Below, piece by piece: positions 15,294-19,075 of a stretch of 64,000 nucleotides of DNA. The first letter of the stretch is position 1, and every line of letters starts with the position of its first letter. The translations under genes were made by a program, and so were the position numbers. Under the pieces are notes generated by a model that saw nothing but the letters and a program-made list of their open reading frames with translations, had not been told where the DNA came from and did not search any database. Origin of the DNA: Epithemia pelagica (Eukaryota > Protista > Bacillariophyta); NCBI GenBank assembly GCA_946965045.2, contig OX337229.1:186001-250000 (forward strand), written 5' to 3'.

Positions 15294-15967
15294 GATTTGT
15301 TGTTTGACTTTTTATGATGATCCGAAGATCATTCGAGTTGTGGACCATGACTTGTCCAATAGCTACCCCTCGCAAAAGCGTGGGTCCGTCGATCGTCAAT
15401 CCCGGTCGATGTTCTTCTCCCGCCAGAATTCTCTTTGGCCACCACAGATACAGAGAGAATTCTTCAAGGGTTGCCGCAACGAAGTGCCAGTACTTTCGGT
15501 CCGATACTCTCAAAATTCTTGGCTCTCGAACGCGGTACCCAAAACGAACACTTCTTGTGCATCGATGGGGGATGACCCCGGTATAGGATGTAAAGTAGTG
15601 GGGAGTATGAGAAACGCTCGAGTGTTTTCGCTGAATCAGGGACATGTCCAGTGGGCACTCCTTCACTCCCACATCACCCTTTATAAAAAACAACACAGAG
15701 CGATAACCAACCAGCGCCATCTTTTGTGAACGCCTGCTGCGGAGAGTGTCTTTCTTCCATCCCGTATCCCGTTGCTTGCTCCATATTATTCTCTAACCTC
15801 GGATTATTATTCTGATTGCTTCCTCTCCTCCTGTCAGTGACGGTGTCGGTGTGTGAATTGATCACCTTCTGCTGTCGTCCTTTTTGTTTTGGGAGTTGGG
15901 AGACCCGCCGTTGTCTCGAGAATCGGAATTTCTCTCCCCACACCAGAAAACCATACGGCTTGTCAAG

Positions 15968-18356
15968 ATGATGATGGTTGGTGGTAGCCGTTGTCGTTGG
16001 ATGGGCGGCTTGTTCGTCCTATGGACCGTATGGTCCGTGGGTACTGCACTCGAAGCACCCGATCAACACACTACACAAACGAATGGTAGGTTCTCGTTGG
16101 GTGATTTTCGTTTGTTTGGATGGATGGGACCATGGTGGTGGTGGTGGTGTTACGACTACTTGAGCGGAGTGTATCGTTCGGAACTCGATGGAAGACGAAT
16201 CTCGAGCCCGGTTGGGATTCACCACGTCATTCTCGAGTGCAACCGATTCGAGTGTGGAGTTGTCGTGATGATTGCTTTCCAATCACCTTGTGTGAAGTGG
16301 CTCTGATGGTTGTCACGGAATTGTCGTTTTGCTCACGGAAAAAGAATCATCTCACACTCGTTTGTGTTTGTATCCTTTTTCGGTTTTGTATTGTTATTTC
16401 GAAATCAAACCGTGCAGTCGAGGACTCTACCACTCCACGCAAGGAGCATGTACGTCGCGGACGTCGTTTGGATGATTATCTCGACCATGAACGTCCGCAT
16501 ATTCGAACCTACGATCATACCCAAATACGAACCAAACAAGGCAATTCGGCGTCTTCGGCCATGGAGGCCGAAAAAGCCTTTCCGGAACAAGCTGATACGC
16601 AATTGCAAGGAGAAGTCATGGGCAACATGCCCATTCCTACCACCAGTGGAGGTGACACCAAGAATGCCAATTCCATGAATATGATGACGCCTTTGAACGA
16701 GGACCATAAAATGGGTAATTCGATGATGATGGAAGACAACAAGATGGGTAACTCCATGATGAACGAGGACCATAAAATGGGTAATTCGATGATGATGGAA
16801 GACAACAAGATGGGTAACAACATGATGATGGAAGACCACAAGATGGGTAACAACATGATGAACGAGGACCATAAAATGGGTCATTCGATGATGATGGAAG
16901 ACAACAAGATGGGTAACAACATGATGATGAATGAAGAAGGCAAAATGGGCAACGGTATGCATGATGAGCCATTTCCCGAAGACGGCAAGCATGGAAATTC
17001 GATGATGATGTCAGGAGAAGATAAAATGGGTAACTCAATGATGATGGAAGACCACAAGATGGGTAACCATATGGTGATGTCCGAAGAAGGCAAAATGGGC
17101 AACAGCATGATGAATGACGATTCCATTAATATGGGTAACAACATGATGAACGGTGATTATCACGATGACACTCATATGAAGACAGCCAATTCCATGATGA
17201 ATGGAGATTATCGTGATGAAACTCATATGAAAACTGCCAATTCCATGATGAATGGAGATTATCATGATGAAACTCATATGAAAACTGCCAATTCCATGAT
17301 GAATGGAGATTATCACGATGACACTCATATGAAAACTGCCAATTCCATGAGGAATGGAGATTATCACGATGACACTCATATGAAAACTGCCAATTCCATG
17401 ATGATGGACTCGAACCACAACGAAATGAAGGAAGGGAACTATGTGGGCACTCCCTGGAACGGCAATGCCAAGACAACGACTACCACGGGTGCTCGCACGG
17501 GTGCAACATCTGCATCCTCCTCTCGTGGTGGATGGCAAATGACAGCTGTGAACGATGGAAACTATCTGGGAGGTTCCAATTACATGGCCATTGCCGACAC
17601 ATCCAACGGACGAATGCCCTTTGGCATTGAAGAGAACGCACCGGACTATAGTATGTTTGTGGATGCCGAAGGACATGTTGGTTTGGGAACCAGTTATCCC
17701 TCAGCCTCCCTTCATATTGTTGGAACGTCTCCTGCCATTAAACTTGAAACCGAAGACATTTATGACGAAACTTCGTGGGATGTCATGGGTAAGTACACGA
17801 ACGAGTTGCAGAATAGGCGAATGAACCTTACTGACAGACACAAATCGTACTCATCTGCTTCTGCTTTGCCTTTTCAGCCACATCGCGCGGTTTGTTTTTC
17901 CACGAGACACACAATGGCCAACAAAGGCTTCCCTTGATCATTCGTCCTGGAGCCCAAACCATGTCCATGGTTCTAAACGAAGAGGGTAATGTTGGTGTGG
18001 GAACGGATTCACCCGACGCGAAACTTCATGTCAAGGGTAACACAATTGTGGAAGGAACCCTCAAGGTTGGCCGACAAGGTTCCCAATGTCAATTCGATAC
18101 CCAACGATGCCAATTTGTGCGCGTCAGTGGTCGTCGAACGTTGGAAAAAGAAGACGAAGATTATTCGTGGGATGAACAACGTGTCCAAGCACTGGAGCGG
18201 GAGACGAAAGAAACCAAGCAAGCCATGGATAAGTTGACGGCACAATTGGCGGAACTACAAGCCACGGCCACTGCCAAGGAAGATATGCTTATGGAGCGCA
18301 TTCAAGCCTTGGAAGATTTGGTGACCAAGCTGATGGCTACCACGAAAGATGAATAA
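15968..18356 (+). CDS. Secreted Met/Asn/His/Asp-repeat protein with C-terminal GNVGVGT (tail-fibre-like) repeats and a coiled coil; 3 exons (15968-16085, 16418-17788, 17878-18356)
   Basis: Signal-peptide-like exon 1. Introns 16086-16417 (GTAGGT..CAG) and 17789-17877 (GTAAGT..CAG) both join in phase 1 and link the three track ORFs. Motifs GHVGLGTSYPSASLHIVG and GNVGVGTDSPDAKLHVKG. Confidence 0.85.
16696..17410 (+). repeat. Coding minisatellites: ~33-bp units (MM[M/N]ED[N/H]KMGN[S/N]) followed by five ~51-bp units (MMNGDYHDDTHMKTANS)
   Basis: Repeats are read directly from the sequence and translation. The 51-bp array spans ~17143-17405. Confidence 0.95.
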
Positions 18357-19075
18357 ATAAAATGGACGTTGAGTGGAGAGTGACAGCACTGTTGCATTGT
18401 TCACAGCCACTCGGACTCTACTATTCTGTGGAGTTTGGGACACTTGTAACCGCGATTTGATAATGTTTTGAGTTACATATTTTCATTGAGAGAGACTGCA
18501 CAATCTATCCGACAACCAAAAGACGAAAACCGGAACATGCGCACAATCATGTTTCAGAATATTACTCCAAATGGAATGAAAATGGCCACTGGAGCCGTCG
18601 TTTAAATCTAAAAAGAGTATACGTTTACGCGCTGTCGTATCTTGTCTACTCAAGAGTTCAAGGCTGGAATCGATTGGAGATCGTAGTCTGGATTGTAGTT
18701 CTTCTCTCGAAGCTTTCCCCGGCATCCATACTCATCATACTCATGATTCATCGATGCTTTCCAAAGATATGCGCTACTCACCCGCGACCCCCGCCTTGGC
18801 AGGTGCGGTTGCGCCGCTTTTCATCTGGTGACTTTTGGGATGAGACCATGCGACAGACTTGTGTGTAGATTCTAAAGAGAAACAAGAAACCAGTCATCTC
18901 AAGAGAGACGCACAAGGTAGAATACACGTTGTATCTCTTCTCGGGACAAGATTTTGGGAATTCCTTAAAATTGCTATCGTTCGACTGGATCGAATCTGTG
19001 GCAGCAGCTTTCGTTTCTGGTAAATCCCTTTTTTCAGGCAAGACAGGATAGCAACCAACCGCTTGTCGTAGCAGT

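What the first reader, a model, noticed from the sequence alone, without database searches (positions are those of the whole stretch)
15968..18356. Secreted Met/His/Asp-repeat protein capped by a bacterial tail-fibre-like domain
Three track ORFs splice into one protein. It has a signal peptide, an RRL motif (RxL is the known processing site of diatom silaffins and silacidins), two arrays of Met-rich repeats (MMMEDHKMGNS; MMNGDYHDDTHMKTANS), two GxVGxGTxxPxxxLHV repeats and a coiled coil. The PF.I...AP...V...G.VG.GT..P..LH..G.P.I.LE......WD pattern recalls bacterial/phage fibre proteins, suggesting an intron-bearing horizontal acquisition. A trimeric fibre displaying a Met/His metal-binding or adhesive polymer would be an undescribed cell-surface component (inference).
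Basis: partly seen in the sequence, partly recalled or inferred. Interest (0 to 1): 0.75.

Follow-up and report, generated by a model that had tools for sequence, protein, structure and literature searches.

The report
Diatom secreted protein with bacterial fibre module
A transcribed, three-exon diatom gene joins an export signal and a long methionine-rich repeat array to a trimer-forming "fibre shaft" module taken from bacteria; it belongs to a small undescribed family seen so far only in Epithemia-type diatoms.

Summary
Both predicted introns (16086-16417 and 17789-17877) appear as exact GT..AG joints in cDNA-like contigs of the same organism. Three homologues are collinear across the exon 2/3 junction.

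The gene has these parts:
- a signal-peptide-like N-terminus;
- a stretch of about 30 residues ending in RRL, the diatom "RXL domain" layout;
- 19 tandem units built on a K-x-[A/G]-N core, 21.7% Met;
- a roughly 150-residue module with two capping-loop motifs;
- a Cys pair, a second basic RRxL site and a 62-residue terminal helix.

The module is homologous to a very large bacterial family of tail-fibre-like surface proteins (hhalign 99.9%, E 2.6e-37). The nearest solved structures are the Bdellovibrio MAT fibres.

Eukaryote-type members were found only in Epithemia clementina (at least 9 genes, 7 of them in one cluster), the window organism and a few unnamed assemblies. They form one clade and share a phase-1 intron inside the module. 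A single old bacterium-to-diatom transfer is therefore well supported.

New here: this is a gene family. Its repeat arrays differ between members, and the E. clementina orthologue has none. Met/His richness is therefore species-specific, and metal binding remains untested. The bacterial S74 chaperone domain is absent.

The parts
15968..16085 (+). Exon 1: start codons and signal-peptide-like N-terminus (39 codons plus 1 nt). The hydrophobic core is residues 11-21, with a G-T-A small-residue site near residue 27.
   Evidence: The joint to exon 2 is seen in X12 contigs.
16086..16417 (+). Intron 1 (332 nt, GT..AG, phase 1). It separates the signal-peptide exon from the rest of the gene.
   Evidence: a joint skips 332 nt, and depth is 18.9 against about 8,000 or more in the exons. 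E. clementina P0002 and P0122 also have a phase-1 intron after the signal-peptide exon.
16418..16470 (+). Pro-region ending in RRGRRL (16453-16470). Together with the tail of exon 1 it gives about 30 residues between the signal peptide and RRL, the 'RXL domain' layout.
   Evidence: RR(R)L[DE]D is conserved in P0002, P0165, P0064, P0095, P0122 and P0128. The definition comes from PMC5525289.
16660..17142 (+). First repeat array: about 13 units of 11-16 residues, of the type MM(M/N)ED(H/N)KMGN(S/N).
   Evidence: TRF; unit list.
17143..17397 (+). Second repeat array: five 17-residue units of the type MMNGDYHDDTHMKTANS (51-nt period, 94% alike).
17398..17532 (+). Last degenerate unit (…KEGNYVGTP) followed by a Thr/Ser/Gly-rich linker.
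   Evidence: It aligns with K(S/T)(A/G)NFIDFSIGTP plus a G/S/N linker in the E. clementina paralogues.
17533..17788 (+). First half of the fibre module, including capping-loop motif 1 (17671-17724). Exon 2 ends one base after the WDVM codons.
   Evidence: BLASTP to bacterial P0005 residues 167-262: 42% over 99 aa, E 1e-19. hhalign.
17789..17877 (+). Intron 2 (89 nt, GT..AG, phase 1). It lies inside the module, which is uninterrupted in bacteria.
   Evidence: Joint. P0002 and P0122 show the same codon and phase, and L086 reads through at the same position.
17878..18086 (+). Second half of the fibre module, including capping-loop motif 2 (17985-18038).
   Evidence: BLASTP to P0005 residues 269-315: 54% over 48 aa, E 8e-13. 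PDB phmmer hit to 8ond_A, E 4.5e-7.
18087..18173 (+). Conserved Cys pair (C-x6-C, 18087-18110), then the basic SGRRTL site (18126-18143), then an acidic stretch.
   Evidence: The Cys pair is nearly invariant in the family, and an RR..L or RxL site follows it in almost all members.
18174..18356 (+). C-terminal long alpha-helix (putative coiled coil) and the TAA stop codon.
   Evidence: AF2: helix 96-157, pLDDT 96-98. Helix 181-244 in the P0002 model. Weak coiled-coil Pfam hits. Best heptad register has 61% hydrophobic residues at a/d positions.

Best explanation
This is a real, transcribed nuclear gene of an Epithemia-type raphid diatom. It encodes a secretory-pathway protein and belongs to a small, undescribed diatom family.

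Shown:
- The C-terminal ~150 residues are homologous to the shaft unit of bacterial tail-fibre-like surface proteins. That unit consists of two beta-rich half-repeats, each ending in a V-G-x-G-T-x-x-P-x-x-x-L-H capping loop.
- The module entered the diatom lineage once from bacteria. It was then built into a eukaryotic gene with a signal-peptide exon, two phase-1 introns (one inside the module), an RXL-type pro-region and an array of K-x-[A/G]-N tandem units.
- That array expanded and diverged separately in each gene. In this gene it became a Met/Asn/Gly/Asp/His-rich array.
- The bacterial tip or S74 chaperone domain is absent. In its place are a conserved Cys pair, a basic RRxL site and a terminal helix of about 60 residues.

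Inferred mechanism:
- In the ER the terminal helices form a coiled coil that sets the register.
- The beta-helix module then zips into a stable trimer, as in the solved Bdellovibrio fibres.
- The N-terminal pro-region, and possibly the C-terminal helix, are clipped at the RRL/RRxL sites by the unidentified diatom RXL protease. Clipping the helix would be the analogue of S74 self-release.
- The mature product would be a three-stranded, flexible, Met-rich polymer held by a rigid C-terminal knot. It would be deposited at the cell surface, in the wall coat or the mucilage.
- What the repeats bind is unknown.
For: - Splicing and transcription.
- Collinearity with E. clementina ACA910_001576 (P0002) and P0004 across the exon 2/3 junction.
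- Homology to bacteria: BLASTP E 1e-19 and 8e-13. hhalign 99.9%, E 2.6e-37 over 146 columns. PDB phmmer 8ond_A E 4.5e-7. Foldseek Bd2133 and Bd3182 at E 2e-6 to 1e-4.
- Capping-loop motif and trimeric beta-helix in MAT fibres: PMC10769870.
- Bacterial breadth: 523 or more confirmed loci in species-representative genomes across many phyla. 68,171 proteins at E<=1e-3. The giant multi-module proteins are bacterial. The context of P0006 is chromosomal and bacterial.
- Narrow eukaryotic range: the only diatom-type hits are E. clementina, the window organism and a few Logan contigs. JGI metagenomes and IMG/VR gave only bacterial- or phage-type matches at 40% identity or less.
- One diatom clade with SH-aLRT 99.
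- Conserved intron position and phase. Module GC is host-like.
- Family architecture, RXL sites and Cys pair. RXL-domain definition and its removal: PMC5525289.
Against: - No localisation, processing or oligomer data exist.
- The signal peptide was not scored by a dedicated tool.
- The AF2 models are monomers. Their TM-scores to the fibre structures are only 0.14-0.24, so the fold match rests on sequence and 3Di similarity, not on global superposition.
- The tree has a very long stem and no root, so no donor can be named, and fast evolution versus old age cannot be separated.
- Absence from other diatoms rests on searches with limits. The top-150 list was crowded by multi-repeat bacterial proteins, and the word-based search scored only 8,000 candidates.
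- In P0002 the C-terminal basic site is only R-H-L, so cleavage there is conjecture.
Confidence: 0.7

Rival explanations
1. First reader's functional reading. The Met/His/Asp repeats act as a surface metal sponge for Cu(I)/Ag(I)/Cu(II), or as an adhesive polymer. This would be the protein's main role, with the fibre module only displaying the repeats.
For: - Met is 21.7%, and His and Asp are each 6.5-9%, of a 290-residue array. The array holds 10 MxM, 6 HxM, 5 HxxxH and 8 MMM motifs.
- Disordered Met/His-rich proteins such as SilE bind Ag+ through such side chains (PMC5008109).
- From memory, unchecked: Pseudomonas CopA/CopB carry D-H-x-x-M-x-G-M-type repeats.
Against: - The E. clementina orthologue P0002 and P0004 lack the array. 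Paralogues have Pro/Tyr-, Asp/Glu- or Asn-rich arrays instead.
- Only 3 MxxH and 3 HxxM motifs are present.
- There are no Pfam, NCBIfam or Atlas matches.
- No expression or binding data exist.
Confidence: 0.2
2. It is a frustule or biosilica-associated matrix protein. It would be routed through the RXL pathway to the silica deposition vesicle or the wall, and the trimer would serve as a cross-linking node.
For: - A signal peptide followed by about 30 residues ending in RRL is the layout called typical of diatom biosilica-associated proteins (PMC5525289).
- The motif is conserved in the family.
- Each repeat unit carries Lys and Ser.
Against: - There are no KxxK, pentalysine or other known silica-targeting motifs.
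- The RXL layout is not exclusive to silica proteins.
- Nothing was tested here.
- This reading is compatible with the best explanation rather than opposed to it.
Confidence: 0.3
3. It is an adhesin or lectin for bacterial surfaces. The fibre-derived module would bind envelope glycans of phycosphere bacteria, or of the cyanobacterial endosymbiont (diazoplast) after delivery into the perisymbiont space.
For: - The family is known only from Epithemia-type hosts.
- In S74-type fibres the beta-helix end forms an O-antigen-binding cleft that is exposed by cleavage (PMC10769870).
- 3 of the 6 host proteins enriched in the E. clementina diazoplast proteome belong to an Epithemia-only orthogroup (PMC12377750).
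Against: - That paper reports no BLAST hits outside diatoms for those candidates, whereas this family hits bacteria readily.
- Gene identifiers could not be mapped, because no supplements are held.
- In bacterial fibres the receptor-binding tip is usually a separate C-terminal domain, and that domain is missing here.
Confidence: 0.1
4. It is an ancient, vertically inherited eukaryotic gene lost almost everywhere, or the result of a eukaryote-to-bacteria transfer.
For: - The stem between the diatom and bacterial clades is long.
- The introns are conserved.
Against: - There are tens of thousands of bacterial members in many phyla, with richer architectures, against a handful of diatom genes in one narrow lineage.
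- No hits came from the other diatom proteomes in the databases searched.
Confidence: 0.04

Closest known systems
Bdellovibrio bacteriovorus MAT (mosaic adhesive trimer) fibres Bd2133 and Bd3182 (PDB 8ond, 8onc, 8ojn; Caulton et al. 2024, PMC10769870)
   Same: They share the capping-loop motif V-G-G/N-x-x-x-P-x-x-x-L on beta-rich repeats. They are the best sequence and Foldseek matches among solved structures. They carry a signal peptide and are surface displayed.
   Different: MAT proteins are about 1,000 aa, with a conserved N-terminal beta-rich domain and an S74 or adhesive tip domain. The diatom protein has one module only, no tip, a low-complexity repeat array, introns and a terminal coiled coil. 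Global TM-score is only 0.14-0.24.
Bacterial 'tail fiber domain-containing' or 'endosialidase-like' proteins of about 350-600 aa (e.g. P0005, P0006, P0007, P0167, P0191, P0193)
   Same: They are the closest homologues, at 35-47% identity over the whole two-loop module and collinear with it. Their C-termini also end in a coiled coil.
   Different: They carry an upstream conserved C-x-G-x-x-C…FGFDTxRLKENN segment. They also carry a Peptidase_S74 domain or a DY…HLP-type C-terminal domain. Both are absent from the diatom family. They have no introns, RXL region or K-x-A-N arrays.
Myelin regulatory factor (MYRF) ICA domain (PDB 7dc3)
   Same: It is another eukaryotic protein that uses a phage-type trimeric beta-helix with the same capping-loop motif. 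The phmmer hit is weak (E 0.34), and the link is noted in PMC10769870.
   Different: MYRF keeps the S74 self-cleaving chaperone and is a membrane-bound transcription factor. Here S74 is absent and the protein is secretory.
Diatom adhesive trail proteins acquired by HGT (Trailins; bioRxiv 10.1101/2023.03.06.531300)
   Same: They are a precedent for bacterial surface-protein domains recruited into secreted raphid-diatom proteins.
   Different: The domain is different (choice-of-anchor A, from my own knowledge). No sequence relationship was seen or tested.
SilE/PcoE-type disordered Met/His 'molecular sponges' (PMC5008109)
   Same: A low-complexity, Met- and His-rich extracytoplasmic polypeptide.
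   Different: There is no homology, HxxM/MxxH motifs are sparse (3+3), and the tandem-repeat organisation differs.

Membership tests
Bacterial/phage tail-fibre-like trimeric beta-helix proteins (MAT-like shaft module) | Capping-loop motif V-G-G/N-pi-x-x-P-x-x-x-L recurring on beta-rich repeats | tested here: met
   There are two copies, at 17671-17724 and 17985-18038. The motif definition is in PMC10769870.
Bacterial/phage tail-fibre-like trimeric beta-helix proteins (MAT-like shaft module) | Significant sequence homology of the module to bacterial members | tested here: met
   BLASTP E 1e-19 and 8e-13. hhalign 99.9%, E 2.6e-37. phmmer against PDB 4.5e-7.
Bacterial/phage tail-fibre-like trimeric beta-helix proteins (MAT-like shaft module) | Trimeric intertwined beta-helix fold | tested here: inconclusive
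   The AF2 monomer model has pLDDT 86.5. Foldseek probability to Bd2133/Bd3182 is 1.0, but TM-score is 0.14-0.24. No multimer prediction is available.
S74-type fibres (endosialidase-like, MYRF) | Peptidase_S74 intramolecular chaperone domain with the SDxxxK dyad | tested here: not met
   There is no PF13884 hit even at E<=1. No SDxxxK motif is present. Bacterial relatives P0006 and P0007 do carry it.
Bdellovibrio MAT family sensu Caulton et al. | Conserved beta-rich domain of about 130 aa directly after the signal peptide | not tested
   The region after the signal peptide here is an RXL pro-region followed by low-complexity repeats. It was not compared with a MAT N-domain profile.
Diatom RXL-domain secretory (biosilica-associated) proteins | Signal peptide followed by about 30 residues ending in RXL (often RRL) | tested here: met
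   RRL falls at about residues 55-57 of the spliced product, after a signal peptide of about 27 residues. It is conserved in the family. Definition: PMC5525289.
Diatom RXL-domain secretory (biosilica-associated) proteins | Proteolytic removal of the pro-region and association with silica or the wall | not testable with these tools
   This needs proteomics or localisation.
Met/His-rich metal sponges (SilE/PcoE) | Sequence homology, or dense HxxM/MxxH motifs | tested here: not met
   No family hits. Only 3 MxxH and 3 HxxM in 290 residues.
Met/His-rich metal sponges (SilE/PcoE) | Metal binding | not testable with these tools
   The composition is merely compatible with it.

The most novel reading that the evidence does not exclude
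An Epithemia-lineage innovation in which a bacterial fibre shaft module lost its self-cleaving S74 chaperone. The chaperone would have been replaced by a host-processed coiled coil, with an RRxL site taking the place of the catalytic serine. This would create a family of secreted trimeric scaffolds. Their fast-evolving repeat arrays would act at the host-bacterium interface (the perisymbiont space of the nitrogen-fixing diazoplast, or phycosphere bacteria) or as a copper/silver-binding surface coat.
Probability: 0.12. Interest if true: 0.8.

Novelty: new variant of a known kind. Interest (0 to 1): 0.55.

Why it matters
Apart from MYRF, it would be a rare documented case of a eukaryote re-using the phage/bacterial trimeric fibre module, and the first such case without the S74 chaperone.

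It shows the stages by which a transferred bacterial domain becomes a eukaryotic secretory gene family:
- a signal-peptide exon;
- an intron inside the domain;
- a host-type pro-peptide;
- lineage-specific repeat expansion;
- tandem duplication.

The family seems confined to diatoms that house a nitrogen-fixing endosymbiont and is very abundant in the one cDNA-like run examined. It is therefore a concrete candidate for surface or symbiosis biology in a system where few host factors are known.

It also offers a compact natural trimerisation tag carrying a 22%-Met polymer, which could be tested for metal binding.

Tried and rejected
- **Family libraries.** Pfam, NCBIfam and PHROGs scans of the exon pieces gave no family above threshold, only weak coiled-coil and tail-fibre hits.
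- **Atlas searches.** The module search gave bacterial S74-type clusters at sub-threshold scores of 0.85-0.88. The repeat-array search gave nothing usable.
- **pdb_via_wide.** The results were swamped by the long helix, with all rows tied at Z 6.6-6.9, so the search was uninformative.
- **The search for related loci.** It worked with a bacteria-only alignment and with the E. clementina paralogue alignment. The latter found only bacterial- or phage-type loci, so no viral vector and no further eukaryotic members emerged.
- **Paralogues in the window.** There are none, only the internal duplication of the two half-modules.
- **Diazoplast proteome link.** Mapping the family to the candidates of Frail et al. 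failed because no supplements are held.
- **Literature.** Searches for Met-rich diatom proteins and for CopA/CopB repeats gave nothing citable.
- **Contamination or pseudogene.** Rejected, because of spliced transcripts, host-like GC, two haplotypes in the DNA runs and conserved introns.
- **Antisense His-rich ORFs over the repeats (e.g. 16405-16992, minus strand).** These are mirror images of the Met-rich repeats, not genes.
- **Joined spliced protein.** It was never built, searched or folded. Exons were used by reference, and the natural contiguous E. clementina homologue P0002 served as a proxy.
Full report
**1. The observation**

Reading the region gives a three-exon gene on the + strand:
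- exon 1 at 15968-16085;
- intron 1 at 16086-16417 (gtaggt…cag);
- exon 2 at 16418-17788;
- intron 2 at 17789-17877 (gtaagt…cag);
- exon 3 at 17878-18356, with TAA at 18354-18356.

Both introns are phase 1.

Logan contigs of four public runs were laid on 15700-18700.
- Runs X9 and X10 (coded "organism B") cover the stretch evenly at about 120-130x, with two haplotypes. They are DNA-like.
- Run X12, from the same organism, has no library type on record. It has word depths of about 8,000-64,000 over the three exons, 18.9 over intron 1 and 345 upstream.
- X12 holds contigs that skip exactly 332 nt and 89 nt with GT..AG ends. Both predicted splices are therefore observed.
- A poly(A) seawater metatranscriptome (X1) holds one identical 215-nt contig from exon 3.
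- The tool warns that contig depth cannot rank genes. I use only the exon/intron contrast.

Tandem Repeats Finder confirms the two arrays. At protein level there are 19 units sharing a K-x-[A/G]-[N/D] core. About 13 are short units of 11-16 residues and five are 17-residue units. Met is 21.7% of the 290-residue region.

All searches used exon pieces by reference. For fold prediction I used the natural, contiguous E. clementina homologue as a proxy.

**2. Relatives, and what they show about the gene model**

A word-based search with exon 2 found two proteins besides the window's own ORF:
- Epithemia clementina ACA910_001576 (P0002, 344 aa);
- a bacterial-looking metagenome protein (P0003).

Searching with P0002 added P0004/P0165, which are uninterrupted transcript-like Logan contigs. 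It also added bacterial proteins, two of which carry Pfam Peptidase_S74.

P0002 and P0004 align without a break across the window's exon 2/3 junction. The junction codon fills exactly one column. This is independent support for intron 2.

**3. A diatom family**

An exhaustive profile search returned 68,171 proteins at E<=1e-3. The top of the list is crowded by 2-8-kaa proteins with 20-48 copies of the module. Those checked are bacterial: Roizmanbacteria, Burkholderiales and a planctomycete.

Hits with a single stretch covering the whole profile, including the tail, were all E. clementina proteins:
- ACA910_017315, _017316, _017317, _017321, _017323, _017325 and _017327, all on one 1.8-Mb contig;
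- ACA910_007656;
- ACA910_001576.

A gene next to _017323 also matches the module. A genomic Logan contig, L086, carries a further member.

All members share one plan:
- a hydrophobic N-terminus;
- an RR(R)L[D/E]D motif;
- a tandem array that differs in every gene but keeps a K-x-[A/G]-N-x-[M/L/F] core;
- a last unit of the form K(S/T)(A/G)NFIDFSIGTP (KEGNYVGTP in the window);
- a Gly/Ser/Asn/Thr linker;
- the module;
- a nearly invariant C-x6-C pair;
- a basic RR..L site, then an acidic stretch, then a long terminal helix.

P0002 and P0004 have essentially no array. The Met/His-rich array is therefore a peculiarity of the window's gene, not of the family.

A profile search of the word-indexed database showed a clean gap. 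Diatom-type members scored E<=1e-105, and the best bacterial protein scored 3e-49. No other named eukaryote appeared.

Scans of JGI metagenomes and IMG/VR with the paralogue alignment gave only bacterial- or phage-type loci at 40% identity or less.

**4. Homology to bacterial fibres**

- The window's exon 2 tail matches bacterial P0005 residues 167-262 at 42% over 99 aa (E 1e-19).
- Exon 3 matches P0005 residues 269-315 at 54% over 48 aa (E 8e-13).
- Intron 2 therefore splits a module that is continuous in bacteria.
- Profile-profile comparison of the diatom and bacterial alignments gives 99.9% probability and E 2.6e-37 over 146 columns.

The bacterial family was confirmed at 523 or more loci in species-representative genomes. 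These span Acidobacteriota, many Pseudomonadota, Planctomycetota, Chloroflexota and other phyla. The one context I inspected is chromosomal.

The bacterial proteins carry an upstream segment (C-x-G-x-x-C…FGFDTxRLKENN) that the diatom proteins lack. Their tails are either Peptidase_S74 or a DY…HLP-type domain, each ending in a coiled coil.

Among solved structures, the best sequence matches are the Bdellovibrio MAT fibres (8ond_A, E 4.5e-7), with MYRF a weak match. Caulton et al. (PMC10769870) describe the motif V-G-G/N-pi-x-x-P-x-x-x-L as capping loops on the edges of a trimeric beta-helix. They also describe the S74 domain as a trimerisation chaperone that cleaves itself off.

An AF2 model of P0002 residues 100-344 has pLDDT 86.5. 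It shows beta strands through residue 170 and a single helix at 181-244.

Foldseek puts Bd2133 and Bd3182 first, at E 2e-6 to 1e-4 with probability 1.0. The TM-scores are only 0.14-0.24. That is expected when a monomer model is compared with chains from an intertwined trimer, but it also means the fold match is not proven by superposition.

The window's own exon 3 folds with a helix at residues 96-157 at pLDDT 96-98.

Pfam finds no S74 domain in the window protein.

**5. Evolution**

In a maximum-likelihood tree of the module (99 rows, quick search), the 12 diatom rows form one clade with SH-aLRT 99, on a long stem. In this tree the window exon pieces were kept as two separate partial rows.

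Inside the clade, the window gene groups with ACA910_001576 and P0165. The eight other E. clementina genes form a second group.

The bacterial part of the tree does not follow taxonomy, and no donor can be named. The tool flagged a long-branch warning.

Exon mapping shows that P0002 and P0122 have the same three-exon plan. Both introns are phase 1, and the second lies in the codon right after W-[D/A]-[I/V]-x, exactly as in the window. L086 reads through at the same spot. The introns therefore predate the split into the two subfamilies.

Module GC (0.47-0.495) is like that of the window (0.502).

Taken together:
- one transfer from bacteria;
- then domestication;
- then tandem duplication and independent repeat expansion.

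The source organism is coded. The following fit, but do not prove, a marine Epithemia such as E. pelagica (60 Mb; PMC12377750):
- the nearest homologues are from E. clementina;
- there is a marine metatranscriptome hit;
- the DNA runs hold about 120 M letters of two-haplotype contigs.

That note is not independent evidence.

**6. How it probably works**

The N-terminus has a basic n-region, a 15-residue hydrophobic core and a small-residue site. RRL follows about 30 residues later. Kotzsch et al. call this layout the RXL domain. They describe it as typical of diatom biosilica-associated proteins and as removed by an unknown protease (PMC5525289).

A second RR..L or RxL site sits between the Cys pair and the terminal helix in almost every member.

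I infer the following. The terminal helices nucleate a trimer, the module zips into a beta-helix, and host proteolysis removes the pro-region and perhaps the helix. Removing the helix would be a functional stand-in for S74 self-cleavage.

The mature product would be a rigid trimeric knot carrying three flexible repeat chains at the cell surface.

Metal binding by the Met/His/Asp array is chemically plausible (compare SilE, PMC5008109). It is unsupported by motif density and by family conservation.

A role at the bacterial or endosymbiont interface is a low-probability but interesting reading. The diazoplast proteome paper reports an Epithemia-only orthogroup among its six candidates. However, it states there are no BLAST hits outside diatoms, and I could not map the identifiers.

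**7. Verdict**

- The horizontal-acquisition reading is supported.
- The functional reading is open.
- I found no description of the family in the literature searched. I rate it a new variant of a known kind: bacterial fibre modules, and bacterial-to-diatom HGT of surface-protein domains.

Noticed in passing
L085 (E. clementina JBGMNV010000043.1, about 1.17-1.20 Mb) and locus tags ACA910_017315-017327: There is a tandem cluster of at least 7 family members, each with a different repeat array (Pro/Tyr-, Asp/Glu-, Asn- or Met-containing units). The 913-aa gene at L085:3467-6509 also matches the module at 34% identity.
   Followed up: partly
window 15959-15966: The second haplotype in DNA runs X9 and X10 has a TT insertion after 15959 and a GAT insertion after 15966, which adds one more Met codon at the start. 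Many SNPs separate the two haplotypes across the gene.
   Followed up: no
window 16405-17676, minus strand: Long antisense ORFs (195, 213 and 133 aa, rich in His, Ile and Ser) run over the repeat arrays. They are mirror images of the Met-rich repeats, not genes.
   Followed up: yes
P0014-P0162; P0015, P0016, P0053: Bacterial giant proteins of 2,000-7,900 aa consist of 20-48 copies of the same two-loop module. Examples come from Candidatus Roizmanbacteria, Burkholderiales and the planctomycete Thalassoroseus. Pfam has no model for this module.
   Followed up: partly
window 15323-15961 and 18369-18689: X12 contigs flanking the coding region have much lower depth (345 upstream, about 1,544 downstream) than the exons. 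They may be UTR variants or neighbouring transcripts. The contig break at 15961-16002 coincides with the allelic indels.
   Followed up: no
C-termini of window exon 3, P0002, P0004, P0064 and L086: Several family members end in a short acidic/basic tail (…KDE, …QKE, …DKE, …VDE, …NQE). It recalls (K/H)DEL retention signals but lacks the Leu. Its significance is unknown.
   Followed up: no
L086 (Logan SRR25945676 contig, 1806 nt): A genomic fragment of a further family member from an unnamed sample. It has the intron at the same codon and a Gly/Arg-rich insert before the coiled coil.
   Followed up: partly
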